From NCBI RefSeq assembly GCF_044704955.1, contig NC_091995.1:47182001-47246000 (forward strand): a DNA stretch of 64,000 bases. Reading direction: 5' to 3'. Positions 1 to 26,471 of the stretch are shown one piece after another. The notes below the pieces were generated by a model. It had not been told where the DNA came from. It saw only the letters and a program-made list of their open reading frames with translations, and made no database searches. The translations under genes and the position numbers were made by a program. Position 1 is the first letter of the stretch; each line of letters starts with the position of its first letter. The stretch is from Pristiophorus japonicus (Eukaryota).

Positions 1-307
1 GCTGTGAAGTGAATGGAAAGGACAATCCGGCAGCATGTATAAAGGGCGGCCTCGCTGCTACTGTCTATTTACACCCAACCCACATTGAATTTCAACTCCA
101 GTATTACCAATATCATTCATTGGGGTTAATGTCTCCTTCCAGAGATGGTGTAAAATGGTCGATTTCCTATTATTTTCCCATGATACACTTCGCCTGATGT
201 TCCTTTCTATTGAAGGTATAATAGACCGATATCCCTGATTTTACACTCTTCCCCCAAGTTTAAATGAACCAATCGTTTGCTGCATTCATTAAAATGAATC
301 CACTCAC

Positions 308-568
308 TTGATGTTTGGTTGTTCTGCCGCAGCCATCCATCAACCTGCCCCTTGATGAGACCATGGAAACCCGCTTGAGTGATTGTGTATTTGTCCCAAT
401 AACTCTTGTCAAATGCTTCCGCCATCCATCGCTGTCTTGGAACAGTTGTTTTCATATTTTTGTCGTAATAAGTTGTCTCACAGCCATCTAGAAGCTCCAT
501 AAAAATATACTCCGGGAGATCAGCACTCCCATGGTTCAGGGTGTAGTAATATAGCAGAGAGTGAGACT
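308..568 (-). CDS. MHC class I-like heavy chain, exon 2 (alpha-1 domain), probably non-classical
   Basis: Minus strand reads acceptor ...tatatcctag|AG TCT CAC TCT CTG and donor ACA TCA A|gtgagt. The exon is 261 bp, phase 1-1, with no stops: (E)SHSLLYYYTLNHGSADLPEYIFMELLDGCETTYYDKNMKTTVPRQRWMAEAFDKSYWDKYTITQAGFHGLIKGQVDGWLRQNNQTS. It has class I alpha-1 hallmarks: SHSLxY start, PE, D29, YD, PRxxWM, YWD and the terminal NQT glycosylation site. Confidence 0.93.
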
Positions 569-810
569 CTAGGATATAATTTAAAAATCACCATCTTTGG
601 CATATCAAATATTAGAAATGTCAGTTTGCTGAAAACTTGGCAAATAATAAGTTATTGGCAAAAATGCAAGACCACTGGCTACATTGCCATAATGCCCATG
701 TTAAACCATTGAAGAGAAGGCAAAATTAGCCTCATTAGCAAATCATACCCATTTACAAGAATACTCCCATTTTCAAAAAAAAGAGAAAAAAGTGATGGTT
801 CGAATAAATT

Positions 811-3745
811 ACATAGAAACAAAGAAACATAGAAAATAGGTGCAGGAGTCGGCCATTCTGCCCTTCGAGCCTGCACCACCATTCAATAAGATTATGGCTG
901 ATCATGCACCTCAGTACCTCTTTCCTGCTGTCTCTCCATACCCCTTGATCCCATATCTAACTCCCTCTTGAATATATCTAACGAACTGGACTCAACAACT
1001 TTCTGCGGTCGAGAATTCCACAGGTTAACAACTCTGAGTGAAGCAATTTCTCCTCATCTCTGTCCTAAATGGTCTACCCCTTATCCTTAGATTGTGACCC
1101 CTGGTTCTTGACTTCCCCAGTACCGGGAACATTCTTCCTGCCTCTAACCTGTCCAATCCTGTCAGAATTTTATGTTTTTATGAGATCCCCTCTCATTCTT
1201 CAAAACTCCAATGATTATAGGCCCAGTCGCTCCAGTCTCTTCTCACATGTCAGGCCTGCCACCATGGAAATCAGTCTGGTGAACCTTCGCTGCACTCCCT
1301 CAATAGCAAGAACGTCCTTCCTCAGATTAGGAGACCAAAACTGAACACAATATTTCAGGTGAGGCCTCACCAAGGCCTTGTACAACTGCAGCAAGACCTC
1401 CCTGCTCCTATACTCAAATCCCCTAGCTATGAAGGCCAACATGCCATTTGTCTTCTTCACTGCCTGCTGTACCTGTATGCCAACTTTCAATGACTGATGT
1501 ACCATGACACCCAGATCTCATTGCAGCTCCCCTTTTCCTAATCTGTCGCCATTCAGATAATATTCTGTCTTCCTGTTTTTGCCACCAAAGTGGATAACCT
1601 CCCATTTATCCACATTAAACTGCATCTGCCATGCATTTGCCCACTCATCTAATCTGTCCAAGTCACCCTGCAGCCTCTTAGTATCCTCCTCACAGCTCAC
1701 ACCGTCACCCAGCTTGGTATCATCTGCAAACTTGGAGATATTACATTCAATTCTTTAATCTAAATCATTGGCGTATATTGTAAATAGCTGGAGTCCCAGC
1801 ACTGAAACCTGTGACACCCCACTAGTCATTGCCTGCCATTCTGAAAAGGAGCCATTTATCCCGACTCTCTGCCTACTGTCTGCCAACCAATTCTCTATCC
1901 ATGTCATAACATTACCTCCAATACTATGTACTTTAATTTTGCACACTAATCTCTTGTGTGGGACTTTGTCAAAAGCCTTTTGAAAGTCCAAATACACCAC
2001 ATCCACTGGTTCTCCCTTGTCCACTCTATTAGTTGCATCCTCAAAAAATTCTAGAAGATTTGTCAAGCATGATTTCCCTTTCATAAATCAATGCTGACTT
2101 GGACCGATCCTGTCACTGCTTTCCAAATGCGCTGCTATTTCATCTTTAATAATTGATTCCAACATTTTCCCCACTACCGATGTCAGGCTAACTGGTCTAT
2201 AATTCCCCGTTTACTTTCTCCCTCCTTTTTAAAAAAGTGGTGTTATATTAGCTACCCTCCGGTCCATAGGAACTAATGCAGAGTTGATAGACTGTTGGAA
2301 AATGATTACCAATGCATCCACTATTTCCAGGGCCACTTCCTTAAGTACTCTGTGATGCAGACTATCAGGCCCTGGCGATTTATCAGCCTTCAATCCCATC
2401 ACGTTCCCCTACGCAATTTCCTGACTAATAAGGATTTCTTTCAATTCCACATTCTCGCTCGACCCTTGGTCCCCTAGTATTTCCAGAAAGGTTATTTGTG
2501 TCTTCCTTCGTGAAGACAGTACCAAAGTATCTATTCAATTGGTCTGTCATTTCTTTGTTCCCCATTATAAATTCACCTGATTCTGACTGCAAGGGTCCCA
2601 CGTTTGTCTTCACTAATCATTTTTTCTTCACATTTCGATAGAAGCTTTTGCAGTCAGTTTTTATGTTCCCAGCTAGCTTCCTCTCCTTCTCTATTTCCCC
2701 CCTCCTAATAAAACCCTTTGTCCTCCTTTGCTGAGTTATAAAATTCTCCAAGTCCTCAGGTTTGCTGCTTTTTCTGGCCAATTTATATGTCTCTTCCTTG
2801 GATTTAAGACTATCCCTAATTTCCCTTGTTAGCCACGGTTGAACCACATTCCCCGTTTTATTTTTACTCCAGACAGGGATTTACAATTGTTGAAGTTCAT
2901 CCATGTGATCTTTAAATGTCTGCCATTGCCTATCCACCATCAACCCTTTAAGTATCATTCACCAATCTATTCTCGCTAATTCACATTTCATACCATCGAA
3001 GTTACCTTTCCTTAAGTTCAGGATCCTAGTCTCTGAATTAACTGTGTCACTTTCCAGCTTAATAAAGAATGCTACCATATTATGGTCACTCTTCCCCAAG
3101 GGGCCTCGCACAACAAGTTTGCTAATTAGTCCTTTCTCATTACACATCACCCAGTCTAGGTTGGCCAGACCTCTAGTTGGTTCCTCGACATATTGGTCTC
3201 GAAAACAATCCCTAATACACTCCAGGAAATCCTCCTCCACCGTATTACTACCAGTTTGGTTAGCCCAATTTATATATAGATTAAAGTCATCCATGATGAC
3301 TGCTGTACCTTTATTGCACGCATCCCTAATTTCTTGTTTGATGCTGTCCCCAACTTCACTACTACTGTTTGGTGGTCTGTACATATCACCCACTAGCATT
3401 TTCTGCCCTTTGCTATTCCACAGCTCTACCCATATAGATTCCACATCATCCAAGCTAATATCCTTCCTTACTATTGCGTTAACTTCCTTTTTAACCAGCA
3501 ACACTACCCCACCTCCTTTTCTTTTCTGTCTATCCTTCTTGAATGTTGAATACCCATGGATGTTGAGTTCCTAGCCTTGATCACCGTGGAGCCATGTCTC
3601 CGTAATCCCAATTATATCACATTCGTTAATAGGTGCCTGCGCAGTTCATTTGTCCACCTTATTGCGAATATTCCTTGCATTGAGGCACAGAGCCTTCAGG
3701 CTTGTCTTTTTAACACACTTTGTCCCTTTAGAATTTTGCTGAATT
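811..3745 (-). mobile_element. CR1-clade LINE (HER1-like), 5'-truncated, decayed ORF2 (APE endonuclease + RT)
   Basis: ORF fragments include YRPPNS, SDHNMV, KSCLTNLLEFFE, YLDFQKAFDKVPH and LVRPHLKYCVQFWSP; (TTTCTATG)n-type tail near 811-840; frameshifts and stops. Confidence 0.95.
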
Positions 3746-4224
3746 CTAGAATTACATCAGCTCATCTGATTTGTAAATTACAACCTTTAAGTAATTAGTC
3801 CTATGTCTGCCCTGTGGCTTCTGTGGTGATTTAGTGAGGACGTGCACCCAGAATTATGGTGCTAAGCCATGCAGAATCCATCCCTTGTGTGTGCCAAGTG
3901 ATCTACTCCCAGTCCGCTGGTATTAGCAGCATTACAGTTGGCCTCAGATTTCCTGAGCCATGCTTCCTATTTCTTGGCTGCTCTACAGTCTCCCCTTCAG
4001 AGAATTGTGCATGTGTGTGGTGAAGACAATCATGGGAAAAGTTGTAGGGAAAATGCGATTACTCGAAGCCCCTACAGAACTTGGAACCCTATCCCGGTGT
4101 TAATAGACACCATCAGGAAGGACAGGTAAAAGTGAGAAAGATGTGCTGTCTATTTTCTACCTGACACAATTAATCAATGAGCATGTTTACATTCCAACTC
4201 GAATATAACCTCAATAACTGAATA

Positions 4225-4535
4225 TCTTGCAACAGTGGCCATTCCTCATCTAGGGTAGTTGTGGTTTGCGCATTATTGGTCTTTAGGGGGAAAAGTCCAG
4301 GAAAACTGTCCACATGCATTCTCCACACACAGGCACTTTCCAGCGAGGGAAATTCTACAATGATCAGCAGTGGATATCCTTGGCTGGTTTTGCTGCAGTG
4401 CCGGAGGCCAGATACGGTGGGGCGAATGGTGACACAAACACAACCGCCCAACTGAACTCATCTCAATCAGCATTGTGCAGGGATGAAACATGGAACCATC
4501 CCCACCTCTGTGGTTCAGCACCACACGCACAATTG
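4225..4535 (-). mobile_element. Degenerate SINE-like interspersed repeat (possible related partial copy ~3810-3960 on +)
   Basis: Resembles, from recall, a common elasmobranch SINE (GTGTGGTGCTGAACCACA...GCTGGAAAGTGC...ATGAGGAATGGCCACT). Not verified. Confidence 0.3.
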
Positions 4536-4967
4536 TGAATGTTTGATGAGCATTTGTTGTTTTCCTTGAAGCTATGATGAGGTAGATTTTCAACTTTCCT
4601 CCCAGGCGTCAAACTGGCAGCCTGTATTAGTCACCAATTCCAGAGACTGTTCCACTTCAAAATACATCACGGCCTGTTTCTACAATGTTGCGCTAATCTG
4701 AAAATCTACACCGTCAGAGATTTTTTGGGGATAAATTCTACTGTCACCGCTGAGCGGAAAGCTCTTAATAGAGGTCCAGCCGCCAATTTTACACCCCATC
4801 CAAGTTCCTTTTCACCAAACTGGGTGGCCGACCTACTACCCCAGCTTTTTCCCTGACGGTAACACTGTAAATTGGTCCATTTTGTCTGATCTGTGAACAC
4901 AGAGATTCGACGTTGGAATTGAGCTGAAGCCGGAGTTTGAAATGAGCGGTAAATGCTTTGTGTGATT

Positions 4968-6327
4968 ATGTTGGCATCCATTATTAAAGAAGTAGTAGCA
5001 GGACATTGGAAAAGCATAATTCAGTCAGGTAGAGTCAGCATGGATTTGTGAAGGGGAAGTCATGTTTGACAAATTTGCTTGAATCCTTTGAGAATGTAAC
5101 CTTCAGGGTGGATAAAGGGGGACCAGTGGATGTGGTGTATTTGGACTTCCAGAAGGCATTTGACAAGGAGCCACATAAAAGATTACTGCAGAAGATAATA
5201 GTTCACGGGATAGGGGGTAATATATTAGCATGGATAGAGGATTGGCTAACAGAAAACAGAGAGTCGGGATATTTGGTTCATTCTTGGGTTGGCAATCAGT
5301 AACTAGTGGGGTGCTGCGTGGATCAGTGCTGGGACCCCAACTATTTACAATCTATATTAACGATGTGGATGAAGGGACCAAGTGTAACGTAGCCAAGTTT
5401 GCTGATGATACAAAGATGGGAGGAAAAGCAATGTGTGAGGAGGACACAAAAAACCTGCAAAAGCACATAGACAGGCTAAGTGAGTGGGAACAAATTTGGC
5501 AAATGGTGTATAATGTTGGAAAGTGTGAGGTTATGCACTTTGGCAGAAAAAAATCGTAGAGCAACTGTAGAAAAATTGCAAAATGCTGCAGTACAGCGGG
5601 ACCTGGGTGTCCTGGTGCATGAAACACAAAAGGTTAGTATGCAGTTACTGCCAGTGATCAGGAAGGCCAATGGTATTTTGGCCTTTATTGCAAAGGGGAT
5701 GGAGTATAAAAGCAGGGACGTCTTGCTACAGTTATACGGGGTATTGGTGAGGCCACACCTAGACTACTGTGTACAGTTTTGGTTTCCATATTTATGAAAG
5801 GATATACTTGCTTTGAAGACAGTTTGGAGAAGGTTCACTTAGCTGATTCTGGAGATGAGGTGTTCGTATTATGAGGAAAGGTTGAGTAGTTTGGGCATCT
5901 ACTCATTGGAGTTCAGAAGAATGAAAGATGATCTTATCGAAACGTACAAGATTATGAGGGGGCTTGACAAGGTTGATGCAGAGAGGATGTTTCCACTGAT
6001 AGGGGAGAATAGAACTAGGGGCATAGACTTAGAATAAGGGGCGCCCATTTAAAACTGAGATAAGGAGGAAATTCTTCCCTCAGAGGGTTGTAAATCTGTG
6101 GAATTCGCTGCCTCAGAGAGCTGTGGAAGCTAGGTCATTGAATAAATTTAAGACAGAGATAGACAGTTTCTTAAACGATAAGGGAATAAGGGCTTTTGGA
6201 GAGCGGGCAGGGAAGTGGACCTGAGTCCATGATCGAATCAGCCATAATCGTATTAAATGGCGGAGCAGGCTTGAGCAGCCGTATGGCCTATGCCTGCTCC
6301 TGTTTCTTATGTTCTTATGTTCTTATT
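4968..6327 (+). mobile_element. CR1 LINE 3' portion (RT), (TTCTTATG)n-tailed subfamily
   Basis: RT fragments 5048-6037 including FADD; tail ttcttatgttcttatgttcttat. Confidence 0.95.
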
Positions 6328-6731
6328 ATCCTTTCCACTGAAGTCAAAGAAGAGTAAAATCAGACTTGTTGTTCAATGAGCGACCAGTCCACTTGCATTC
6401 GCTTCACAGCCCCACCAAAGTTCATTTGTCCGCATAGACTATTTTTACCATCAAAGATTGCTGCAGCATGGAATACCCTATTCAGATATGGGGTGGATGT
6501 AGTCCAGAAAATAGGTTTGAATAGGGAGGCGGAAATATATAGGGAAAAAAGGGAGTGGTCTGGGACTCACTGCCGGACTCCTGTCCCTACAGCTAGGAGA
6601 GAACTCAGAGTGGCAGCTGGTAACTCATATGTCATTTCAATGTCTTTGTTTTCAGTGTGTGGAACCAGGAGAACGAGCAGCTGAGATGCAATTCTAGTTC
6701 TGTTTGGATTACAAGATATAACGACACGCTT

Positions 6732-9700
6732 TCAGTTGCTACGGGTGATGGGTTCTGCTTTGTGGTCAACCGCTGGGTCGGTTGCCACTGGTGTGTGTGT
6801 TGGACGGTCACAAAAGGTGAAGTCTATTGTGGGTTGCTCTGGATAGTCTGTGAATCTGAGTTTAGTTTGGTCCAAGTGTATTCTATAGGTGAGTCCATTT
6901 GAAAGTTTGACTAGAAACACCCTACTCCCCTCTTTGGCCATGACAGTGCCGGGAAGCCACTTGGGACCTTGTCCATAGTTCAGCACAAATACAGGATCAT
7001 TAATCTCGATTTCGCGTGACACATTTGTGCGATCATGATATGTATTCTGTTGAAACCGCCTGCTCTCTACCTGTTCATGTAGATCAGGGTGGACTAACGA
7101 GAGCCTTGTCTTAAGTGACCTTTTCATGAGCAGTTCAGCGGTGGGGGGGGGAACCCCAGTGAGCGAGTGAGGTCTTGTGCCGTAACTAAGCAGGACTCAG
7201 GATAGGCGAGTCTGCAGTGAGCCTTCAGTTACCCTCTTCAAGCTCTGCTTGATTGTTTGCCCTGCTCCCTCTGCCTGACCATTGGACGCTGGTTTAAACG
7301 GGACAGATGAGACATGTTTGATCCCGTTGCGGGTCATGAACTCTTTGAATTCGGCACTGGTGAAGCACGGCCGATTGTCACTTAGAAGGACGTCAGGCAG
7401 GCCGTGCATGACAAACATGGCCCGCAGGCGTTCAATAGTGGCAGCGGACGTGCTTGTCGACATTATCTCACATTCAATCCATTTCGAGTATGCATCTACA
7501 ACCATTAGGAACATTTTTCCCAAGAACGGGCCTGCATAGTCGAAATGGACCAAGACCACGATTTGGAGGGCCAAGACCATAAAATTAATGGCGCCTCCCT
7601 GGGTACATTGCTTAACTGAGAACATGTGTTACAGTTGTGCATGCAGGACTCTATGTCGGCATCAATACTGGGCCACCACACATGGGATCTGGCTATTGCT
7701 TTCATCATTACAATGCCTGGGTGGGTACTGTGAAGATCACTAATGAAAGTCTCCCTGCCCTTTCTTGATACCATTACTCAATTACCCCACAGAAGGCAGA
7801 CTGCCTGTATACACATTTCATCTTTGCACTGCTGGTATGGCTTTATTTCTTCCTGCATTTCTAACGGGACACTGGACCAACTCCCGTGGAGCACAGAGTT
7901 TTTTTACTAAAGACAGTAAGGGGTCCTGGCTCATCCAGGTTCTAATCTGTTGGGCGGTAACAGGTGATTGCTCACTCTCGAATGCTTCCATTACCATAAC
8001 TAAATCTGTGGGCTGTGCCATCTCCACCCCTATGGTGGGCAATGGCAGCCTACTGAGAGCATCGGCACAGTTTTCTGTGCCTAGTCTGTGGCGGATGGCA
8101 TAGTTGTATGTGGACAACGTGAGCGCCCATCTCTGGATGTGGGCCGCTGCATTCGTATTTATCCCCTTAGCCTTCTTTTCTGAAAGTATCAATGGCTTAT
8201 GGTCGGTTTCCAATTCAAATTTGAGCCCAAACAGATATTGATGCATTTTCTTTACCCCATAAACACACACTAACACTTATTTTTCGATCATGCTGCAGGC
8301 CCTCTCAGCCTTGGACAGACTTCTGGATGCATAAACAACCGGTTGCAATTTCCCAGATTCATTAGCTTGTGGCAATACACACCCGACACCATATGACAAC
8401 GCATCACATGCTAGTACCAAGTGCTTACATGGATCATACAACACAAGCAATTTGTTTGAGCATAACGGTTTTCTAGCTTTTACAAAGGCGTTTTCTTGGC
8501 TTTTGCACCATAGCCATTCATCTCCTTTGTGCAGTAAAGAGTGCAGTGGTTCTAACAGTGTGCTAAGACCCGGTAAGAAGTTATCAAAGCAGTTCAGGAG
8601 TCCTAGAAACGACCGCAGCTCCATCACGTTCTGTGGTCTCGGTGTTTTCTCGATTGCCTCCATCTTCGAATCGGTTGGCCTGATGCCGTCCGCCGCGATT
8701 CTTCACCCCAGGAACTCCATTTCAGGCACCAGGAAAACGCACTTCAAGCATTTTAACCTGAGCCCTACGTGATTAAGCCAACTAAGAACTTGCTCCAGAT
8801 TCTGCAGATGCTCGACGGTGTCCCGACCTGTAACCAAGATATCGTCCTGGTGCGTGGGACCAACTTCAGTAAGCTTTCCATATTTCTCTGATCAAATCCC
8901 AAACGGGCATCTGTTGTAGATGAAGAGACCTTTGTGCATATTGATGCAGGTGAGGCTCGTCGATGATTCCTCCAGCTCCTGCGTCATGTAGGCCAAGGTC
9001 AATTCCAGCTTCATGAACGTTTTTCCTCCCGCCAGCGTCAAAAATAGGCCGTCTGCCTTTGGTATTGGGTATTGATCCTTGAGGGAGAAACAATTGATAG
9101 TTATTTTGTAATTACCACAGAGTCTGATGGTGCCATCTCCCTTGAGGACTGGAACAATTGGACTGGCCCACTCGTTGAATTCGATCGGTGAAATGCTGCC
9201 CTCTCGCTGCAGCTGGTCCAGCTCAATCTCTACCCTCGCTCTCATCATGTATAGTACTGCTCTTGCCTTGTGATGGATGGGTCGCACCCCCGGAATCTGC
9301 ACTTTTGCTCCTTGGAACTTCCCGATGTCTGGTTCGAATAGTGAAGGGAACTTGTTTAAGACCTGGACACACGAAGTATCGTCAGTGGACGAGAGCGCTT
9401 GGACATCGTCCCAGTTCCAGCTTATCTTGCCCGGCCAGCTCCTGCCGAGCAGCATGGGACCATCGCCCGGTACCACCCAGAGAGGTAACTTGTGCACCGC
9501 TCCATCGTAGGAGACCTTTACAGGAGCACTGCTGATTACGGGAATCATTTCCTTTGTGTACGTTCTCAGTTTAGTACGAATGGGAGTCAGGACTAGCCTT
9601 GAGGCCTTGCTGCACCACGATTTATCAAAAGTCTTTTCACTCATAATGGACAGGCTCACACCCATGTCCAGCTCCATTGAGTCTGGGAGTCAATTTAATT

Positions 9701-10881
9701 CAACCTTCAGCATTATTGGGGGACACTTTGTGGTAAATGTGTGCACCCCATATAGCTCTGTCTCCTCGGTCTGAGGCTCTGGTTCATCGTGATCCACCAT
9801 GGATCTGTCCTCCTCTGCAACATGGTGGTTTGTAGGATTGGCAGAGTTTGCAGCTCACCTGCACATATATTGGAGATGTCCCATTGTTCCACAGTCCTTG
9901 CAACTGTATCCTTTGAAGCGGCATGAATGCAAATGATGATCACCCCCGCAGCGCCAACAAGGTATTAATGGCGTTGCATTCACCACCCTTGATGATGGTC
10001 ACAGACATCTGTGGATGTGCAGCTGCAGGCACATGAGGCCTGCCCTGTACATTACGATTTAAAAACAAAATTACTTTGTTCACAGTACTTGTAGTAGCAC
10101 TCGTGTGCTGAGAGATTTGTTTGATATTGTCACTGGTGGCGATGAATGCCTGGGCTATTGCTATGGCTTTGTTCAAAGTTGGGGTCTCTACAGTCAAAAG
10201 TTTGAGAAGTATTACTTCATGGCCAATGCCAAGTACACATAAGTCCGTGAGCATGTGCTCCAAATGTCCTACAAATTCACAATGTCCTGCAATGCGTCTT
10301 AGCTCCGGTGATGTAGCTCACCACTTCCTGGCCTTCAGACCTCTTGTACGTGTAGAACCGGTACCTCGCCATCAGAACGCTTTCCTTTGGGTTTAGATTC
10401 TCCCGGACCAGTGCGCACAAATCATCATATGACTTCTCTGTGGGTTTCGCTGGAGCAAGCAGATTTTTTATAAGGCTCCGCAAACGGTGAGAAGGATCAC
10501 CCTTCGTTTGGCAGCGTTCACTTCTCCTTCCAGCTCGTTGGCCACGAAGTATTGGTCGAGTCGCTCCACAAAGGTTTCCCAATCATCTCCCTCCGAAAAT
10601 TTCTCCAGAATGGCCACTGTTCTCTGCATCATTGCGGTGGGGTTCGTCATCTTTATCTCATCGCCAGTTGATCAGTATTGAATAAAGAGTCTGACCAGAT
10701 ACTGTGAGCTCAAAGTACGGTGTGACCGTAGTCCTTTATCACAGGTCTCCAGACTGCCTCTCCAGCCTGTGAGGACTCCTTATGTACAGGTGCTCCCAAG
10801 GGATTGTGGGATACCTTGGAACTCCCGGGGCTGAGCCCTCTGGTGGTTAAACAAGGCATTTACAGGTTTACATATATAACA
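6732..10881 (-). mobile_element. Ty3/Gypsy LTR retrotransposon, decayed, 5' LTR present, 3' end truncated
   Basis: Order gag (WETFVERL, zinc knuckles), protease (MELDMG), RT (WASPIVPV), RNase H (CDA, ETDHKPL, ADALSRL), integrase (HPG, WWP, DYAGPF, SNGQAE). No 3' LTR seen. Confidence 0.93.
10669..10881 (-). repeat. 5' LTR (TG...CA, ~213 bp) followed by PBS TGGCGATGAG (10666-10657)
   Basis: Minus strand TGTTATAT...GATCA, then after 2 nt TGGCGATGAG, a degenerate match to the tRNA-Ser(GCU)-type PBS TGGCGACGAG, just upstream of gag. Confidence 0.8.
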
Positions 10882-11381
10882 TAAAGAACATCTGGAAATA
10901 AATGTAACCTTCAATGAATGTAGTCTTAAATTTCCACGTGTGAAACCATGCTCCAAACAAGCGTGTTCATTCCAGGAAGACCAAAAGTCGGTGCACTTCC
11001 AGGCCAAGAGTGTGTCCCTGCATCTTAGATTCTCACTCACAACAGAGCATCACTCCCAGCGAATGAGGCTCCTTGCCCCGAATACAGTCAGGGAATGTTT
11101 CTCTTCTGCTGCCCAGTTATGACGTCCCTCTCTCTAAACCCAATACAAATCCTTGCTAGATGCTGCTGCCGTGTTGGTGACCAACAATGGAGCAGTAACA
11201 AGGACACCGAACTACTGACCACTGGGTCATTTTCCACACATTCTGATTTTCAGACAGTCCATCATTTAGGTGGCCAGAGCTGCTGCCAGAAACAGGCAGG
11301 GTCCTAATGAATATCGGCAAAGTGTGAGTCACACTACATTATCAAGATCCCACCAACTTTATTGATCGGACGGGCAGAGTT

Positions 11382-11597
11382 TAGGTTTTCCAACGCTCCA
11401 GAACTATCCTGGAATCTCCAGGAATTAAAGATTAATCTTCTGCATTCACTGCAAGAAACTCGGGAGAAATACAACAATAACATTTGAAAAAGTCGCAATT
11501 ATAAAAGTATTAGAGATGGGGAATAAAGGCAGTGTGACTGGGCTAGAGGTCATGTGATGAAAGCTCCAGGAATGAGGCCAGTCAAGTTGGCAATGCA
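11382..11597. mobile_element. Degenerate MITE-like DNA element with AGGGTTGCCAAC-type termini (hAT-like)
   Basis: Left taggttttccaac and right gttggcaatgca are imperfect inverted termini; no coding capacity. Confidence 0.35.
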
Positions 11598-11775
11598 TCG
11601 GCCTGATTCCAGCGCAAATCCCCATCTACAATTGATGGACATCACTCCATTCCTGCAATCACTATGCCAGTAACTTCCTTCAGAGTCCCGCACCACACAA
11701 ACCCATATCATCCCCTCAGAGGTTCAACCAGCACAGGAGCTCCCCTCGGGCATCCACTCGGTCCGAGGCATTTGC

Positions 11776-12780
11776 TGTAACCCGGACTAAACATGGGGCA
11801 GTCGGTGTATCCTGGACTAAACAAGGGGCAGTCGGTGTATCCCAGACTAAACAAGGGGCAGTCGGTGTATCCCAGACTAAACATGGGGCAGTCGGTGTAT
11901 CCCATACTAAACACGAGGCAGTCGGTGTATCCCATACTAAACACGAGGCAGTCGGTGTATCCTGGACTAAACATGGGGCAGTCGGTGTATCCTGGACTAA
12001 ACAAGGGGCAGTCGGTGTATCCCAGACTAAACAAGGGGCAGTCGGTGTATCCCATACTAAACACGAGGCAGTCGGTGTATCCTGGACTAAACATGGGGCA
12101 GTCGGTGTATCCTGGACTAAACAAGGGGCAGTCGGTGTATCCCAGACTAAACATGGGGCAGTCGGTGTATCCCATACTAAACACGAGGCAGTCGGTGTAT
12201 CCTGGACTAAACATGGGGCAGTCGGTGTATCCTGGACTAAACAAGGGGCAGTCGGTGTATCCCAGACTAAACAAGGGGCAGTCGGTGTATCCCAGACTAA
12301 ACATGGGGCAGTCGGTGTATCCCATACTAAACACGAGGCAGTCGGTGAATCCCGGACTAAACATGGGGCAGTCGGTGTATCCTGGACTAAACAAGGGGCA
12401 GTCGGTGTATCCCGGACTAAACACGGGGCAGTCGGTGAATCCCGGACTAAACAAGGGGCAGTCGGAGTATCCCAGACTAAACATGGGGCAGTCGGTGTAT
12501 CCCAGACTAAACACGAGGCAGTCGGTGTATCCTGGACTAAACACGGGGCAGTCGGTGTATCCTGGACTAAACACGGGGCAATGGTGCATCCGGGATGAAA
12601 CACAGGGCAGTCGATGTAAGCCGGACTAAACAAGGGGCAGTTGGACTATCCCGGACGAAACATGGGACAGTCGCTGTAACCCGGACTAAACACGGGGCAG
12701 TCGGAGTAAGTAACACAGACTAAACACGGGATAGTCAGTACATCCCGCACTAAACACGGGACAGTCAGTGTAAACCTGAG
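11776..12780. repeat. 30-bp tandem repeat (CCCGGACTAAACATGGGGCAGTCGGTGTAT), head of satellite 1
   Basis: Exact 30-bp periodicity 11781-12590 (~27 units), then degenerate units grading into the 34-mer. Confidence 0.97.
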
Positions 12781-15700
12781 TAAACAGAGGGGCAGTCAGT
12801 GTTACTAACTCAGACCAAACACAGGGCAGTCAGTGTTACTAACTCAGACTAAACACGGGGCAGTCAGTGTAACTAACTCAGACTAAAGAGAGGACAGTCA
12901 GTGTAACTAACTTAGACTAAGCACGGGACTGTCCGTCTAACAGACTCATACTAAACATGGGACAGTCAGTGTAACTAACTCAGATTAAACAAGGGATAGT
13001 CAGTGTAACTAACTCAGACTAAACAGGGGACAGTCAGTGTAACTAACTCAGATTAAACAGGGGGCAGTCAGTGCAATTAACTCAGATTAAACACAGGGCA
13101 GTCAGTATAACTGACTCAGACTAAACACGGGACAGTCAGTGTAACTGACTCAGACCAAACAGGGGACAGTCAGTATAACAGACACAGACCAATCAGGGGA
13201 CAATCAGTGTAACTGACTCAGACTAAACACAGGGCAATCAGTATAACTAACTCAGATTAAACACGGGACAGTCAGTGTTACTAATCAGACTAAACATGGG
13301 ATAGTCAGTGTAACTAACTCAGACTAAACACAGGGCAGTCATTGTTACTACTCAGACTAAACACGGGACAGCCAGTGTAACTGACTCAGACTAAACACAG
13401 GGCAGTCAGTGTAACTGACTCAGATTAAACACGGTACAGTCAGTGTAACAAACTCAGACTAAACACGGGGCAATCAGTGTAACTAACTCAGATGAAACAC
13501 GGACAGTCAGTGTAACTAACTCAGACTAAATAGGGAACAGTCAGTGTAACTAATTCAGACTAAACAGGGAAAATCAGTGCAACTAACTCAGACTAAACAC
13601 GGGACAGTCAGTGTAACTAACTCAGACTAAATACGGGACAGACAGGGTAACAAAATCAGACTAAACACGGCACATTCAGTTTAACTAACTTACACAAAAC
13701 AGGGGACAGTCAGTGTAACTAACTCAGGCTAAACACGGGGCAGTCAGTGTTACTGACTCAGATTAAACAGGGGGCAGTCAGTGTAACTAACTCAAATTAA
13801 ACAAGGGATAGTCAATGCAACTAACTCAGACTAAACAGGGGACAGTCAGTGTAACTAACTCAGATTAAACAGGGGGCAGTCAGTGCAATTAACTCAGATT
13901 AAACACGGGGCAGTCAGTGTAACTAACACCGATTAAACACGGGGCAGTCAGTGTAACTGACTCAGAATATACAAGGACAGTCAGTGTAACTAACTGAGAC
14001 GAAACACGGAAAGTCAGTATCACTAACTCAGAGTAAACACGGGACAGTCAGTGTAACTAACTTAGACTAAACACGGGACAGTCAGGGTAACTAAATCAGA
14101 CTAAACACGGGATATTCAGTTTAACTAACTTATACAAAACAGGGGAGAGTCAGTGTAACTAACTCAGACTAAACACGGGGCAGTCAGTGTTACTGACTCA
14201 GATTAAACAGGGGCCAGTCAGTGTAACTGACTCAGACTAAACATGGAACAATCAGTATAACTAACTCAGACTAAATGCGGACAGTCAGTGTAAGTAACTC
14301 AGACTGAACATGGGACAGTCATTGTAACAAACTCAGATGAAACAGGGGCCAGTCAGTGTAACTGACTCAGACTAAACATGGAACAATCAGTATAACTAAC
14401 TCAGACTAAATGCGGACAGTCACTGTAAGTAACTCAGACTGAACATGGGACAGTCATTGTAACAAACTCAGATGAAACACGGGACAGTCAGTGTAACTGA
14501 CTCAGACTAAACACGGGATTGTCCGTGTAACAGACCCAGACTAAACATGGGACAGTCAGTGTAACTAACTCAGATTAAACAAGGGATAGTCAGTGCAACG
14601 AACTCAGACTAAACAGGGGACAGTCAGTGTCACGAACTCAGATTAAACAGGGGGCAGTCAGTGCAATTAACTCAGATTAAACACGGGGCAGTCAGTGCAA
14701 CTAACTCAGATTAAACACGGGGCACTCAGTGCAACGAACTCAGACTAAACACGGGACAGTCAGTGTAACTGACTCAGACTAAACAGGGGGCAGTCAGTGT
14801 AACTGACAGAGACCAATCAGGGGACAATCAGTGTAACTGACTCAGACTAAACACACGGCAGTCAGTGTTACAAATCAGACTAAACACGGGACAGTCAGTG
14901 TTACTAATCAGACTAAACACGGGATGGTCAGTGTAACTAACTCAGACTAAACACAGGGCAGTCATTGTTACTACTCAGACGAAACACGGGACAGTCAGTA
15001 ACTGACTCAGACTAAACACAGGGCAGTCAGTGTAACTGACTCAGATTAAACAGAGGGCAGTCAGTGTAACTGACTCTGACTAAAGACAGGGCAGTCAGTG
15101 TAACTGACTCAGATTAAACAGAGGGCAGTCAGTGTAACTAACTCAGATGAAACACGGACAGTCAGTGTAACTAACTCAGACTAAACAGGGGACAGTCAGT
15201 GTAACTAACTCAGACTAAACACGGAAAATCAGTGTAACTAACTCAGACTAAACACGGGACAGTCAGTGTAACTAACTCAGACTAAACACAGGGCAATCAG
15301 TATAACTAACTCAGATTAAACACGGGACAGTCAGTGTTACTAATCAGACTAAACATGGGATAGTCAGTGTAACTAACTCAGACTAAACACAGGGCAGTCA
15401 TTGTTACTACTCAGACTAAACACGGGACAGCCAGTGTAACTGACTCAGACTAAACACAGGGCAGTCAGTGTAACTGACTCAGATTAAACACGGTACAGTC
15501 AGTGTAACAAACTCAGACTAAACACGGGGCAATCAGTGTAACTAACTCAGATGAAACACGGGCAGTCAGTGTAACTAACTCAGACTAAATAGGGAACAGT
15601 CAGTGTAACTAATTCAGACTAAACAGGGAAAATCAGTGCAACTAACTCAGACTAAACACGGGACAGTCAGTGTAACTAACTCAGACTAAATACGGGACAG

Positions 15701-18700
15701 ACAGGGTAACAAAATCAGACTAAACACGGCACATTCAGTTTAACTAACTTACACAAAACAGGGGACAGTCAGTGTAACTAACTCAGGCTAAACACGGGGC
15801 AGTCAGTGTTACTGACTCAGATTAAACAGGGGGCAGTCAGTGTAACTAACTCAAATTAAACAAGGGATAGTCAATGCAACTAACTCAGACTAAACAGGGG
15901 ACAGTCAGTGTAACTAACTCAGATTAAACAGGGGGCAGTCAGTGCAATTAACTCAGATTAAACACGGGGCAGTCAGTGTAACTAACACCGATTAAACACG
16001 GGGCAGTCAGTGTAACTGACTCAGAATATACAAGGACAGTCAGTGTAACTAACTGAGACGAAACACGGAAAGTCAGTATCACTAACTCAGAGTAAACACG
16101 GGACAGTCAGTGTAACTAACTTAGACTAAACACGGGACAGTCAGGGTAACTAAATCAGACTAAACACGGGATATTCAGTTTAACTAACTTATACAAAACA
16201 GGGGAGAGTCAGTGTAACTAACTCAGACTAAACACGGGGCAGTCAGTGTTACTGACTCAGATTAAACAGGGGCCAGTCAGTGTAACTGACTCAGACTAAA
16301 CATGGAACAATCAGTATAACTAACTCAGACTAAATGCGGACAGTCAGTGTAAGTAACTCAGACTGAACATGGGACAGTCATTGTAACAAACTCAGATGAA
16401 ACAGGGGCCAGTCAGTGTAACTGACTCAGACTAAACATGGAACAATCAGTATAACTAACTCAGACTAAATGCGGACAGTCACTGTAAGTAACTCAGACTG
16501 AACATGGGACAGCCATTGTAACAAACTCAGATGAAACACGGGACAGTCAGTGTAACTGACTCAGACTAAACACGGGATTGTCCGTGTAACAGACTCAGAC
16601 TAAACATGGGACAGTCAGTGTAACTAACTCAGATTAAACAAGGGATAGTCAGTGCAACGAACTCAGACTAAACAGGGGACAGTCAGTGTCACGAACTCAG
16701 ATTAAACAGGGGGCAGTCAGTGCAATTAACTCAGATTAAACACGGGGCAGTCAGTGCAACCAACTCAGATTAAACACGGGGCACTCAGTGCAACGAACTC
16801 AGACTAAACACGGGACAGTCAGTGTAACTGACTCAGACTAAACAGGGGGCAGTCAGTGTAACTGACAGAGACCAATCAGGGGACAATCAGTGTAACTGAC
16901 TCAGACTAAACACACGGCAGTCAGTGTTACAAATCAGACTAAACACGGGACAGTCAGTGTTACTAATCAGACTAAACACGGGATGGTCAGTGTAACTAAC
17001 TCAGACTAAACACAGGGCAGTCATTGTTACTACTCAGACGAAACACGGGACAGTCAGTAACTGACTCAGACTAAACACAGGGCAGTCAGTGTAACTGACT
17101 CAGATTAAACAGAGGGCAGTCAGTGTAACTGACTCTGACTAAAGACAGGGCAGTCAGTGTAACTGACTCAGATTAAACAGAGGGCAATCAGTGTAACTAA
17201 CTCAGATGAAACACGGACAGTCAGTGTAACTAACTCAGACTAAACAGGGGACAGTCAGTGTAACTAACTCAGACTAAACACGGAAAATCAGTGTAACTAA
17301 CTCAGACTAAACACGGGACAGTCAGTGTAACTAACTCAGACTAAACACGGGACAGACAGGGTAACTAAATCAGACTAAACACGGGACATTCAGTTGAAGT
17401 AACTTACGCAAAACAGGGGACAGTCAGTGTAACTAACTCAGACTAAACACGGGGCAGTCAGTGTAACTGACTCAGACTAAACACGGACAGTCAGTGTAAG
17501 TAACTCAGACTAAACAGGGGACAGTCAGTGTAACTAACTCAGCCTAAACACGGAAAATCAGTGTAACTAACTCAGACTAAACACGGGGCAGTCAGTGTAA
17601 CTGACTCAGACTAAACACGGGACAGTCAGTGTAACTGACACAGACTAAACACGGGACAGTCAGTGTAACTGACTCAGACTAAACAGGGGGCAGTCAGTGT
17701 AACTGACAGAGACCAATCAGGGGACAATCAGTGTAACTGACTCAGACTAAACACACGGCAGTCAGTGTTACGAATCAGACTAAACACGGGACAGTCAGTG
17801 TTACTAATCAGACTAAACACGGGATGGTCAGTGTAACTAACTCAGACTAAACGCAGGGCAGTCATTGTTGCTACTCAGACGAAACATGGGACAGTCAGTA
17901 ACTGACTCAGACTAGACACAGGGCAGTCAGTGTAACTGACTCAGATTAAACAGAGGGCAGTCAGTGTAATTAACTCAGACTAAACAAGGAGCAATCAGTG
18001 TAACTAACTCAGACTAAACACGGACAGTCAGTGTAACTAACTCAGACTAAACACGGGACAGACAGGGTAACTAAATCAGACTAAACACGGGACATTCAGT
18101 TGAAGTAACCTACGCAAAACAGGGGACAGTCAGTGTAACTAACTCAGACTAAACACGGGGCAGTCAGTGAAACTGACTCAGACTAAACACGGACAGTCAG
18201 TGTAAGTAACTCAGACTAAACAGGGGACAGTCAGTGTAACTAACTCAGACTAAACACGGAAAATCAGTGTAACTAACTCAGACTAAACACGGGGCAGTCA
18301 GTGTAACTGACTCAGACTAAACACGCGACAGTCAGTGTAACTGACACAGACTAAACACGGGGCAGTCATTGTTACTGACTCAGATTAAACACTGGACAGT
18401 CAGTGTAACTGACTCAGACTAAACATGGAACAATCAGTGTAACTAACTCAGACTAAACACGGACAGTCAGTGTAAGTAACTCAGACTAAACACGGGACAG
18501 ACAGGGTAACTAAATCAGACTAAACACGGGACATTCAGTTGAAGTAACCTACGCAAAACAGGGGACAGTCAGTGTAACTAACTCAGACTAAACACGGAAA
18601 ATCAGTGTAACTAACTCAGACTAAACACGGGGCAGTCAGTGTAACTGACTCAGACTAAACACGGGACAGTCAGTGTAACTGACACAGACTAAACACGGGG

Positions 18701-24700: not shown

Positions 24701-26392
24701 TCAGACTAAATAGGGGACAGTCAGTGTAACTAACTCAGACTAAACACGGGACAGTCAGTGTAACTGACTCAGACTAAACACGGGACAGTCAGTGTAACTG
24801 ACTCAGACTAAACACCGGGCAGTCAGTGTAACTGACTCAGACTAAACACGGAGAGTCATTGTAACTAACTCAGACTAAACAAGGGGCAGTCATTGTAACT
24901 AACTCAGACTAAACACGGGATAGTCCGTGTAACGGACTCAGACCAAACACGGGGCAGTCAGTGTAACTAACTCAGACGAAACACGGACAGTTAGTTTAAC
25001 TGACACAGACTAAACACGGGACAGTCAGTGTGACTAACTCAGACTAAACATGGGGCAGTCAGTGTAACTAAATCAGACTAAACACGGGGCAGTCACTGTA
25101 ACTAACTCAGACTAAACACGGACAGTCAGTGTAACTGACTCAGACTAAACACGGGACAGTCAGTGTAACTGACTCAGACTAAACACGGGACAGTCAGTGT
25201 AACTGACTCAGACTAAACATGGGACAGTCAGTGTAACTGACTCAGACTAAACACGGGACAGTCAGTGTAACTGACTCAGACTAAACACCGGGCAGTCAGT
25301 GTAACTGACTCAGACTAAACAAGGGACAGTCAGTGCAACTGACTCAGACTAAACACCGGGCAGTCAGTGTAACGAACTCAGACTAAATAGGGGACAGTCA
25401 GTGTAACTAACTCAGACTAAACACGGGACAGTCAGTGTAACTGACTCAGACTAAACACGGGACAGTCAGTGTAACTGACTCAGACTAAACACCGGGCAGT
25501 CAGTGTAACTGACTCAGACTAAACACGGAGAGTCATTGTAACTAACTCAGACTAAACAAGGGGCAGTCATTGTAACTAACTCAGACTAAACACGGGATAG
25601 TCCGTGTAACGGACTCAGACCAAACACGGGGCAGTCAGTGTAACTAACTCAGACGAAACACGGACAGTTAGTTTAACTGACACAGACTAAACACGGGACA
25701 GTCAGTGTGACTAACTCAGACTAAACACGGGGCAGTCAGTGTAACTAACTCAGACTAAACACGGGGCAGTCAGTGCAACTAACTCAGACTAAACTCGGAC
25801 AGTCAGTGTAACTGACACATACGAAACATGGGGCAGTCAGTGTAACTAAATCAGACTAAACACGGGGCAGTCACTGTAACTAACTCAGGCTAAACACGGA
25901 CAGTCAGTGTAACTGACTCAGACTAAACACGGGACAGTCAGTGTAACTGACTCAGACTAAACACGGGACAGTCAGTGTAACTGACTCAGACTAAACACGG
26001 GGCAGTCAGTGTAACTGACTCAGACTAAACACAGGACAGTCAATGTAACTGACTCAGACTAAACACGGGCCAGTCCGTGTAACTGATTCCGACTTAAGAA
26101 TGGGCAGTCCGTGTAACTGACTCAGACTAAACAGGGGGCAGTCAATGTAACTAATTCAGACTAAACACGGACAGTCCATGTAACTGACTCAGATTAAACA
26201 CGGGAAAATCGGTGTAACCCAGACTAAACACTGAGCAGTCTGTGTAAACTGGACTAAACACAGAGTAACTCAGTGTAACTAACTCAGATTAAACACGGGA
26301 AAATTGGTGTAACCCAGACTCAACACTGGGCAGTCTCTGTAAACTGTACTAAACACGGAGTAACTCAGTGTAACTAACTCAGATTATACATG
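12781..26392. repeat. 34-bp satellite 1 (AACT[A/G]ACTCAGACTAAACACGGGACAGTCAGTGT), ~400 units, with higher-order repeats
   Basis: Uninterrupted tandem array; diagnostic variants recur at 2059, 2106, 952 and 677 bp spacing; some 30-bp units reappear at ~26200-26390. Confidence 0.97.
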
Positions 26393-26471
26393 GGTCCAAT
26401 ATGTCATTCACGCTGGCGGTCATGTCATGCAATAAAGACTATAGCCGCACAAGTCACGTGGTTTGACTTAC

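What the first reader, a model, noticed from the sequence alone, without database searches (positions are those of the whole stretch)
308..568. Divergent, probably non-classical MHC class I alpha-1 with altered groove residues and an unpaired cysteine
Seen: an intact, spliceable alpha-1 exon. By hand alignment to HLA numbering, Y7, Y59 and the N86 glycan site are kept. Position 84 (Arg in non-mammalian classical class I, binds the peptide C-terminus) is Gln, E63 is Tyr, position 81 is a bulky Trp, conserved G26 is Glu, and a lone Cys sits at about position 31 near the beta2m-facing strand. Inference: a non-classical molecule with a remodelled F pocket that may bind a non-peptide or restricted ligand and may form an interchain disulfide. 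I cannot assign it to the named chondrichthyan lineages (UAA, UBA, UCA, UDA, UEA, UFA), so it could be a new one.
Basis: partly seen in the sequence, partly recalled or inferred. Interest (0 to 1): 0.8.

Follow-up and report, generated by a model that had tools for sequence, protein, structure and literature searches.

The report
Sawshark UGA nonclassical class I exon
This is the first groove-forming exon of a Japanese sawshark gene from the shark and ray nonclassical MHC class I lineage called UGA, which probably displays lipids rather than peptides, so it is a further copy of a known kind and not a new lineage.

Summary
Minus-strand 568..308 is an open 261-nt alpha-1 exon with an AG acceptor, a GT donor and phase 1 at both ends, and every residue call was reproduced.

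The "new lineage" reading does not hold.
- The exon is 100% identical to a public Pristiophorus japonicus protein model.
- The AlphaFold model of that protein matches PDB 9CH4, "shark nonclassical MHC class I, UGA", at 71% identity (Z 29.7).
- It matches UFA (8GM8) at 29% and shark classical class I at 35%.
- In a 40-row tree it lies in a 100/100 shark-plus-ray clade, next to two other sawshark copies.

Trp81, a non-Arg residue at 84, Phe143, Leu159 and the lone Cys31 belong to the whole lineage. Only Gly26-to-Glu is private to this copy.

The public model's first 170 residues are read from a LINE retrotransposon. A proper leader exon lies at 26523..26472, which leaves a 25.9-kb first intron filled with satellite.

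Lipid presentation is inferred from a review's personal communication, a conserved greasy groove and a YxxØ tail motif in orthologues. This copy's modelled tail lacks that tyrosine.

Expression could not be tested. The scan has already found another UGA gene 6.9 Mb away in this genome.

The parts
308..568 (-). Alpha-1 exon of a UGA-lineage nonclassical MHC class I gene. It is 261 nt, phase 1 at both ends, with 86 whole codons read from 566.
   Evidence: sequence and open frame. (9ch4_A, E 1.5e-39). (P0001 residues 172-257, 100% identical).
569..570 (-). Splice acceptor AG of intron 1
   Evidence: Read directly.
306..307 (-). Splice donor GT of intron 2 (context gtgagt)
   Evidence: Read directly.
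1..305 (-). Start of intron 2. The alpha-2, alpha-3, transmembrane and tail exons lie beyond the left edge of the window.
   Evidence: tblastn found no class I match here beyond read-through from the exon. Sequence read. The later exons are known only from the public model P0001.
26472..26523 (-). Proposed true leader exon (coding part). It runs from ATG through MFRFVFLSLCYFQRAVP plus one G, followed by gtaagt. The G joins the AG at 568-567 to make Glu, the residue seen at this spot in 5 orthologue rows and at the start of the 9CH4 chain.
   Evidence: Best hit of a six-frame scan of the whole window with three orthologue leaders: score 30, against 28 for the runner-up, which has no Met. Sequence read. 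Glu at this column. The 9ch4 chain starts E-S-H-S. Splicing itself is not shown.
569..26471 (-). Inferred intron 1, 25,903 nt
   Evidence: Follows from the leader and alpha-1 exon coordinates. Not confirmed by RNA.
12677..26394 (.). 34-bp satellite of about 406 copies inside intron 1. It ends 78 nt from the leader exon.
   Evidence: Tandem Repeats Finder.
11776..12871 (.). 30-bp satellite of about 36 copies, abutting the 34-bp array inside intron 1
40393..40785 (-). First exon of the public model P0001 (residues 1-131). It is read from a 69-bp tandem repeat at the 5' end of a LINE, has no signal peptide, and is not part of the class I gene in my reading.
   Evidence: tblastn 99% identity. 69-bp repeat at 40279-40878. 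Donor read.
36294..36411 (-). Second exon of the public model P0001 (residues 132-170 plus one base). It is the start of a LINE reverse-transcriptase ORF.
   Evidence: ORF 35704-36408 (minus strand) carries RVT_1 at E 5.2e-19.

Best explanation
The exon encodes the alpha-1 half of the ligand groove of a UGA-lineage nonclassical MHC class I heavy chain of the Japanese sawshark. It is one of three species-specific copies.

Shown here:
- The exon is intact and spliceable.
- It belongs to the shark-plus-ray lineage whose orectolobiform member is the solved structure 9CH4, named UGA.
- The odd groove residues and the lone Cys are traits of the whole lineage.
- A proper leader exon lies 25.9 kb upstream.

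Inferred:
- The heavy chain pairs with beta-2-microglobulin.
- It holds a conserved hydrophobic ligand, probably a lipid, in a groove that has lost three of the eight contacts that clamp peptide ends.
- In most species it cycles through endosomes by a tail YxxØ motif, much as CD1 does, to show that ligand to T cells.

This copy differs by Gly26-to-Glu within four neighbouring changes in strand 2, and by Phe in place of the tail tyrosine in the public model. It may therefore traffic or assemble differently.

Odds:
- UGA membership: about 0.95.
- Lipid-type ligand for the lineage: about 0.6.
- This copy makes a working protein: about 0.5.
For: Identity.
- P0001 is 100% identical over the exon and is named as a Pristiophorus japonicus protein.

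Lineage.
- The AlphaFold model has pLDDT above 90 over most of residues 171-440.
- It matches 9ch4 'shark nonclassical MHC class I, UGA' at Z 29.7, rmsd 1.3, 267 aligned and 71% identity. The next entry, chicken BF2, has Z 26.9 and 34% identity.
- Zebra shark P0169 matches 9ch4 ungapped over 268 residues at E 6.7e-170, so 9ch4 sits inside the clade.
- In the tree of 40 rows, the window protein joins P0002 and P0164 (99/97) within an 18-row shark-plus-ray clade (100/100). The classical rows lie elsewhere.

Groove.
- Peptide-end residues: 8 of 8 in 5 of 5 classical rows, 5 of 8 here.
- Of 35 groove columns, aliphatic/Phe/Met/Cys residues average 16.3 in the 18 UGA rows and 11.8 in the 5 classical rows.
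- 20 of 35 groove columns are conserved in at least 16 of 18 rows, against 61 of 145 other alpha-1/alpha-2 columns.

Tail.
- YxxØ sits at one aligned spot in 11 of 18 UGA rows, 0 of 3 sister rows and 0 of 5 classical rows.

Literature.
- UFA and UGA are called CD1-like, single- or low-copy and MHC-linked, with crystal and mass-spectrometry data suggesting lipids (PMC12562908, passages, given there as a personal communication).

Intactness.
- P0001 has 4 private changes at lineage-conserved sites. The range over the 18 rows is 1-14 and the median is 5.

Leader exon.
Against: - No RNA run was listed. Expression, and the leader-to-alpha-1 splice, are therefore untested.
- The public model joins the exon to LINE-derived exons instead. 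That could reflect real chimeric transcripts without a signal peptide.
- Lipid binding rests on a personal communication in a review. I found no primary paper.
- By the wider hydrophobic count that includes Tyr and Trp, UGA and classical grooves differ little: 25.1 against 23.2 of 35.
- The model is no closer to CD1 than to other class I-like folds. Chicken CD1-1 has Z 24.9 and CD1d 22.6, against ZAG 25.2, HFE 24.7 and H-2Kd 24.4.
- Gly26 is otherwise kept in 17 of 18 UGA rows and in all 6 rows outside UGA and its sister clade (5 classical, 1 nurse-shark nonclassical). Glu there may harm folding.
- None of the three sawshark models has the tail YxxØ.
- The alpha-2 to tail exons were seen only through the public model, not as DNA.
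Confidence: 0.85

Rival explanations
1. Decaying duplicate. This copy is an unexpressed or non-productive UGA paralogue on its way to becoming a pseudogene. Its exons are still open only because the duplication is recent.
For: - The first intron is 25.9 kb and holds about 14.6 kb of satellite.
- The public gene model skips the leader and starts in a LINE, which gives a protein without a signal peptide.
- Gly26-to-Glu falls at a site kept in 17 of 18 lineage rows.
- The tail tyrosine is Phe in the model.
- No RNA run was listed.
Against: - The exon is open with good splice signals.
- The leader exon has an ATG, a hydrophobic core, the right phase and a gtaagt donor.
- The public model is open through to the tail.
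- Its 4 private changes at conserved sites are below the lineage median of 5.
- An earlier scan note describes another sawshark UGA gene whose leader and alpha-1 exon lie across 34 kb (s1-874737, not checked by me). If so, a long first intron is not peculiar to this copy.
Confidence: 0.22
2. New lineage. This is the first reader's reading: a class I lineage outside UAA to UFA that has not been named.
For: - It is indeed outside UAA.
- It is only 29% identical to UFA, 8GM8.
- Pfam's MHC_I model does not detect the exon on its own.
Against: - The model is 71% identical to the structure titled UGA.
- It lies in the same 100/100 clade as the zebra shark protein that matches that structure at E 6.7e-170.
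- UGA is named in print (PMC12562908).
Confidence: 0.02
3. Peptide presenter. The molecule binds peptides like a classical or near-classical class I molecule, with a restricted repertoire.
For: - Tyr7, Tyr59, Lys146, Trp147 and Tyr171 are kept.
- After 9CH4, the nearest solved structures in the PDB-wide lists are peptide-binding bird class I molecules (Z 26-27). In the representative set, ZAG and a marsupial class I follow instead.
Against: - Arg84, Thr143 and Tyr159 are lost across the lineage. Thr143 and Tyr159 are present in 0 of 18 rows and Arg84 in 3 of 18.
- The groove is conserved rather than variable.
- The review reports lipid-like ligands.
Confidence: 0.08

Closest known systems
Shark UGA nonclassical MHC class I (PDB 9CH4, released 2026-03-18)
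   Same: - 71% identity over 267-268 aligned residues, Z 29.7, rmsd 1.3.
- Ungapped alpha-1 alignment, with the same Cys31, Trp81 and N-Q-T sequon.
- Same clade, through the zebra shark orthologue.
   Different: In the alpha-1 alignment:
- Position 26 is Glu here and Gly in 9CH4.
- Position 63 is Tyr here and Cys in 9CH4.
- Position 84 is Gln here and Lys in 9CH4.

Other differences:
- This is one of three sawshark copies, whereas the review calls the gene single- or low-copy.
- The modelled tail has Phe where orthologues have the YxxØ tyrosine.
Sawshark paralogues P0002 and P0164 (public models, same species)
   Same: - Same species-specific clade, 99/97.
- Alpha-3 is 96% and 94% identical to the window protein.
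   Different: - Alpha-1 is only 78% and 74% identical. That is as far as from the Heterodontus (74%) and Heptranchias (75%) orthologues.
- Four neighbouring strand-2 residues differ from both paralogues.
- P0164 has Ser in place of Cys31.
Unnamed sister clade (P0180 sawshark, P0179 Heptranchias, P0007 Leucoraja)
   Same: - Sister to UGA at 98/94 support.
- Non-Arg 84, a hydrophobic residue at 143 and Leu159 are shared.
- The best solved match of P0180 is also 9CH4.
   Different: - 39-42% identity to the window protein.
- No Cys31; the column holds Tyr or Leu.
- No tail YxxØ.
- An even greasier groove: 21.3 of 35 columns.
Shark UFA (PDB 8GM8)
   Same: It is also titled a shark nonclassical class I molecule, and the review calls it CD1-like too.
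   Different: Only 29% identity and Z 21.1 to the model.
CD1 (chicken CD1-1 3JVG, human CD1d 6V7Y)
   Same: - Proposed way of working: a nonpolymorphic, beta-2-microglobulin-associated lipid presenter.
- Orthologue tails carry YxxØ. That CD1b, CD1c and CD1d have such a motif is recalled, not from a call.
   Different: - 26% and 20% identity, Z 24.9 and 22.6. This is no better than ZAG, HFE or H-2Kd.
- No CD1 among the 56 PDB sequence hits of the exon.
- So it is an analogue, not a member.
Classical shark class I (UAA; PDB 6LUP, Triakis P0186 and P0191)
   Same: - Same fold and same exon phases.
- Tyr7, Tyr59, Lys146, Trp147, Tyr171 and the Asn86 sequon are shared.
   Different: - 33-35% identity.
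- A separate clade.
- Arg84, Thr143 and Tyr159 are replaced.

Membership tests
MHC class I heavy chain (fold and gene structure) | An alpha-1 exon of about 260-270 nt in phase 1/1, followed by alpha-2 with its disulfide pair and a C1-set alpha-3 domain | tested here: met
   - The exon is 261 nt in phase 1/1.
- The public model P0001 carries PF00129 and PF07654 (precomputed).
- The alpha-2 and alpha-3 Cys pairs sit at invariant columns.
- The model shows a class I fold.
- The exon alone misses Pfam's MHC_I model.
Classical class I (UAA) | All eight residues that bind the peptide ends: Tyr7, Tyr59, Arg84, Thr143, Lys146, Trp147, Tyr159, Tyr171 | tested here: not met
   The window protein keeps 5 of 8, with Gln84, Phe143 and Leu159. 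All 5 classical rows keep 8 of 8 at the same columns. The residue list is recalled knowledge.
Classical class I (UAA) | Falls in the classical shark and ray clade | tested here: not met
   The classical rows form their own 100/100 clade away from the window protein.
UGA lineage | Close sequence and structure match to the molecule named UGA | tested here: met
   - 71% identity, Z 29.7, rmsd 1.3, 267 of 267 target residues aligned.
- Foldseek E 3.2e-40.
- The exon alone gives E 1.5e-39.
UGA lineage | Same clade as the UGA reference, apart from other lineages | tested here: met
   The 18-row clade has 100/100 support. The 9CH4 sequence could not be placed in the tree, but its near-identical zebra shark relative P0169 is inside the clade.
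UGA lineage | MHC linkage, in the class Ib cluster | not testable with these tools
   - The window holds only retrotransposons and satellites beside the gene.
- Earlier scan notes place another UGA gene and a sister-lineage gene on the same piece, 6.9 and 2.2 Mb away. I did not check them.
UFA lineage | Close match to the molecule named UFA (8GM8) | tested here: not met
   29% identity, Z 21.1. For the exon alone, 8gm8_A has E 2.2e-08 against 1.5e-39 for 9ch4_A.
Shark UBA, UCA, UDA, UEA lineages | Clustering with named reference sequences | not tested
   No sequence carrying these names came back from any search. The defining papers (Almeida 2020, 2021) were not held. The nurse shark 'nonclassical MHC class I antigen' P0182 sits in a different 100/100 clade.
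CD1 | Sequence or structural kinship closer than to other class I-like molecules | tested here: not met
   - No CD1 among the 56 PDB hits of the exon.
- CD1 rows have Z 22.6-24.9 at 20-26% identity, tied with ZAG, HFE and H-2Kd.
CD1 | Binds lipid in a deep hydrophobic groove | not testable with these tools
   There is only indirect support: a greasier and conserved groove and the review's statement.

The most novel reading that the evidence does not exclude
The window copy is a neofunctionalised UGA paralogue. Its groove-lining residues stay close to its sisters: 3 and 5 of 35 groove columns differ, against 29 and 30 of 145 elsewhere in alpha-1 and alpha-2. What changed is the platform strand next to the conserved Cys31, where four neighbouring strand-2 residues differ, including Gly26-to-Glu. 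The endosomal-sorting tyrosine is also lost. The copy would then assemble with a different partner or stay at the cell surface, and sample a different lipid pool than the ancestral endosome-cycling UGA. That would be a shark parallel to the division of labour among mammalian CD1 isoforms. Alpha-1 is 74-78% identical among the paralogues and alpha-3 94-96%. That fits long-lived duplicates whose alpha-3 is kept alike by gene conversion.
Probability: 0.12. Interest if true: 0.55.

Novelty: new member of a known kind. Interest (0 to 1): 0.3.

Why it matters
UGA and UFA are put forward as the oldest CD1-like lipid presenters. That would move lipid antigen presentation back to the first jawed vertebrates.

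This report adds three things:
- The sawshark carries three UGA copies, whose ligand-domain exon has diverged far more than the alpha-3 domain.
- The public model of this copy has a false N-terminus read from a retrotransposon, and the true leader exon is 25.9 kb away behind a satellite.
- The features that looked exotic in isolation belong to the whole lineage.

This is useful for annotation and for anyone choosing UGA copies to express. It opens no new question by itself.

Tried and rejected
- **Sister clade as UFA.** I first took the sister clade (P0179, P0180, P0007) for UFA. This was rejected. 8GM8, titled UFA, is only 29% identical to the model and is not among the top 60 PDB hits of P0180, whose best hit is 9CH4.
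- **Nurse shark P0182 as UFA.** Rejected. Its best PDB hit is chicken BF2.
- **Cys31-Cys63 disulfide as the reason Cys31 is kept.** Rejected. Cys63 occurs in 4 of 18 rows and Cys31 in 16 of 18.
- **Excess decay in this copy.** Not found. It has 4 private changes at conserved sites against a median of 5.
- **Single-domain trees to date the duplication.** These came out unresolved. The three sawshark rows sit in a polytomy for alpha-1 and alpha-3.
- **Other class I exons or MHC neighbour genes in the window.** None were found. tblastn with 9 class I proteins hit only the exon and the LINE-derived parts of P0001. Ten long ORFs gave reverse transcriptase, RNase H or nothing. Rfam gave 0 matches.
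- **Literature.** Searches for 9CH4, for UFA/UGA/CD1-like terms, for orthologue accession numbers and for shark/CD1/lipid terms found no primary UGA paper in the held library. They found only the review PMC12562908 and Veríssimo 2023 (PMC10751288). I read passages of both through the find mode. Their supplements were closed and may list UFA and UGA gene ids.
- **Expression.** No RNA run was listed.
Full report
**1. The observation.**
- On the minus strand, bases 568..308 form a 261-nt exon. AG precedes it at 570-569 and gtgagt follows from 307.
- Read with two leading bases, 86 codons from 566 and one trailing base, it is open. The other two frames have stops.
- Phase 1 at both ends and this length are what class I alpha-1 exons have. 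That is established knowledge, not taken from a call.
- The 307 bases to the left hold no further exon, so alpha-2 onwards lies outside the window.

**2. It is far more than chance.**
- phmmer against PDB sequences returned 56 distinct sequences at E<=1. All but one (an acetate kinase at E 0.18) are class I or class I-like chains.
- 9ch4_A stands alone at 1.5e-39, ungapped, with 59 of 86 identical by my count. Shark classical 6lup_A follows at 1.1e-12.
- Pfam's own MHC_I model missed the lone exon.
- The full HMMER scan of 1.84 billion representatives gave 270 hits at E<=0.001. P0001, of 487 aa, was 100% identical at its residues 172-257.
- The cluster look-up names P0001 and P0002 as Pristiophorus japonicus proteins, "class I histocompatibility antigen, F10 alpha chain-like". 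The genome is therefore the Japanese sawshark, and the gene is already modelled in public.

**3. Which lineage.**
- I aligned 65 relatives with P0001 first and predicted its structure. Mean pLDDT was 76.9; residues 171-440 are mostly above 90, and the first 170 are poor.
- The second-look aligner and Foldseek both put 9CH4 first: Z 29.7, rmsd 1.3, 267 aligned, 71% identity, Foldseek E 3.2e-40. They give its title as "Crystal structure of shark nonclassical MHC CLASS I, UGA", released 2026-03-18.
- Next come chicken BF2 molecules (Z 26.9, 34% identity), MR1 (about 25.8) and shark classical 6LUP (25.5, 35% identity).
- The search over 48,161 representatives adds 8GM8, "shark nonclassical MHC CLASS I, UFA", at Z 21.1 and 29% identity.
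- It also shows that CD1 is no closer than other class I-like folds. Chicken CD1-1 has Z 24.9 and CD1d 22.6, against ZAG 25.2, HFE 24.7 and H-2Kd 24.4.
- Zebra shark P0169 matches 9CH4 without a gap over 268 residues at E 6.7e-170. So 9CH4 is an orectolobiform orthologue of the family described next.

**4. The family.**
- A word-indexed search with residues 172-487 of P0001 found 46 proteins at E<=1e-10 among 775 candidates.
- Eighteen further models of sharks and rays score 58-83% identity. They come from Pristiophorus (2 more), Heterodontus, Heptranchias, Chiloscyllium, Scyliorhinus, Stegostoma, Cetorhinus, Mustelus, Rhinoraja, Pristis (3), Leucoraja (2, one a fused model covering 56% of the query), Mobula and Hemitrygon. 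Identity then drops to 44% and below.
- I built a maximum-likelihood tree of 40 rows that I picked.
- I left out the fused or partial Leucoraja models P0003, P0178 and P0157; the unnamed Logan fragments P0158 to P0163, P0194 and P0197; and the distant rows P0189 and P0202 to P0205.
- The window protein groups with P0002 and P0164 of the same species (99/97), inside an 18-row shark-plus-ray clade (100/100).
- That clade is sister (98/94) to a three-row clade (P0179, P0180, P0007). Both are apart from the classical rows (100/100 for their own clade) and from a clade holding a nurse shark "nonclassical MHC class I antigen".
- So this is UGA, an old lineage that predates the split of sharks and rays.

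These counts use alignment A2 of 27 rows.
- *Mapping.* I mapped HLA positions to columns from memory. As a check, all eight peptide-end residues appear at the mapped columns in 5 of 5 classical rows.
- *Peptide-end residues.* The window protein keeps Tyr7, Tyr59, Lys146, Trp147 and Tyr171, and has Gln84, Phe143 and Leu159.
- *Across the 18 UGA rows.* Trp81 is in 17 and Leu159 in 18. Thr143 is in none; that column is mostly Phe, otherwise Leu, Met or Ser. Arg84 is in 3, and Cys31 is in 16, with Ser in P0164 and Tyr in P0173.
- *Tyr63.* It is shared with three other rows (P0002, Heterodontus, Heptranchias). Four galeomorph rows, and 9CH4, have Cys there instead.
- *Gly26-to-Glu.* It is the only call that is private to this copy. 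Gly is in 17 of 18 UGA rows and in all six rows outside UGA and its sister clade, and the sister clade has Ala.
- *Strand 2.* Gly26-to-Glu sits within four neighbouring strand-2 changes that set this copy apart from both paralogues.

**6. The cysteine.**
- The ectodomain of P0001 has five Cys. Two pairs sit at the invariant alpha-2 and alpha-3 columns, and the fifth is this one. So it is unpaired within the chain.
- The predicted secondary structure puts it at the first residue of strand 3.
- The same column holds Leu, Met, Val or Glu in other class I rows, and Tyr or Leu in the sister clade. The mostly hydrophobic residues suggest an at least partly buried position.
- I therefore favour a buried free thiol over an interchain bond. 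I had no coordinates, so this is inference.

**7. How it probably works.**
- The review PMC12562908 (passages) states that UFA and UGA are CD1-like, MHC-linked and single- or low-copy. It also states that crystal structure and mass spectrometry suggest lipids like those of human CD1d. It gives this as a personal communication.
- Veríssimo 2023 (PMC10751288, passages) says the same of UFA as unpublished data.
- Groove composition: of 35 groove columns, aliphatic/Phe/Met/Cys residues average 16.3 in UGA rows against 11.8 in classical rows.
- With Tyr and Trp counted as well, the gap shrinks to 25.1 against 23.2.
- Groove conservation: 20 of 35 groove columns are conserved in at least 16 of 18 rows, against 61 of 145 other alpha-1/alpha-2 columns. 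That is the reverse of a polymorphic peptide groove.
- Eleven of 18 UGA rows end in a YxxØ motif at one aligned tail position (for example YNAV, YNTV, YQNI, YENI). None of the 3 sister rows or 5 classical rows does.
- That such motifs send proteins, CD1 among them, through endosomes is recalled knowledge.

**8. This copy's peculiarities.**
- The modelled tail has Phe at the motif's tyrosine, and none of the three sawshark models has the motif. The tails lie outside my window and rest on public models only.
- Alpha-1 is 78% and 74% identical to the two paralogues. That is no closer than to Heterodontus (74%) or Heptranchias (75%). Alpha-3 is 96% and 94% identical to the paralogues, against 82% to those species.
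- Groove columns differ less than the rest: 3 and 5 of 35, against 29 and 30 of 145.
- Single-domain trees could not resolve whether the copies are old with a homogenised alpha-3, or young with a fast-changing alpha-1.
- Private changes at lineage-conserved sites number 4, under the median of 5. There is thus no sign of excess decay.

**9. The gene model.**
- Residues 1-131 of P0001 map to 40785..40393, inside a 69-bp tandem repeat.
- Residues 132-170 map to 36411..36294, the start of an ORF with a reverse-transcriptase domain. Both have usable splice sites.
- This N-terminus is LINE sequence and has no signal peptide.
- A six-frame scan of the whole window with three orthologue leaders gave one stand-out hit on the correct strand, upstream of the exon. 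It is at 26523..26472 and reads ATG, MFRFVFLSLCYFQRAVP, then one G before gtaagt.
- That G plus the AG at 568-567 gives Glu. Five orthologue rows have Glu there, and the 9CH4 chain starts with it.
- A CCAAT sits at 26643..26639, about 120 nt upstream of the ATG (read, function untested).
- The inferred first intron is 25,903 nt. It holds a 34-bp satellite of about 406 copies and a 30-bp satellite of about 36 copies.

**10. What could not be done.**
- No RNA run was listed for the exon, so read laying was not used and expression is open.
- The window itself holds no MHC neighbour genes.

**11. Earlier notes of this scan.** I did not check these unless stated.
- The rest of this gene lies just left of the window (s1-900254).
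- The satellite lies next to the leader exon (s1-877881). My searches agree with this.
- Another UGA gene lies 6.9 Mb away on the same piece (s1-874737).
- A gene of the neighbouring lipid-type lineage lies 2.2 Mb away (s1-874480).

**12. Verdict.**
- The exon is real, intact and nonclassical, but it is not a new lineage. It is one of three sawshark copies of UGA.
- The useful additions are the corrected 5' end, the copy number, and the short list of changes that are truly private to this copy.

Noticed in passing
window 11776-26394: Two abutting satellites fill more than half of the inferred first intron: a 30-bp unit of about 36 copies and a 34-bp unit of about 406 copies, 84-86% matches. 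They end 78 nt from the leader exon.
   Followed up: partly
window 34432-40878, minus strand: A G+C-rich LINE (60-63% GC) with reverse-transcriptase ORFs at 34432-36408 and a 69-bp tandem repeat of 8.7 copies at its 5' end, 40279-40878. The public class I model reads two coding exons out of it.
   Followed up: partly
window 31263-33396 and 61730-62830: Further retroelement remains. There are RVT_1 ORFs on both strands at 31263-32048 (minus) and 32740-33396 (plus). An ORF at 61730-62830 (minus) carries reverse transcriptase plus RNase H, which looks like an LTR-type pol.
   Followed up: no
window 54310-56453 and 57708-58069: Two arrays of a 34-bp unit. Their consensus units look like reverse complements of each other, so the same satellite appears in inverted orientation about 1.25 kb apart.
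   Followed up: no
window 52132-52862: A 76-bp (or 229-bp) tandem repeat of about 9.5 copies.
   Followed up: no
proteins P0179, P0180, P0007 (not in the window): An old shark-plus-ray class I clade sister to UGA (98/94). It has an even greasier groove (21.3 of 35 columns), no Cys31 and no tail YxxØ. It is not UFA, and no tool gave it a name.
   Followed up: partly
UGA orthologue tails (proteins, not in the window): A YxxØ motif sits at one aligned tail position in 11 of 18 UGA rows, in both sharks and rays. All three sawshark models lack it, and the window gene's model has Phe at the tyrosine.
   Followed up: partly
Pristis pectinata P0173, P0176, P0177 (not in the window): The sawfish also has three UGA copies on one contig. 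P0177 has 14 private changes at conserved sites, including the loss of Tyr59 and Trp60, so it may be decaying.
   Followed up: no
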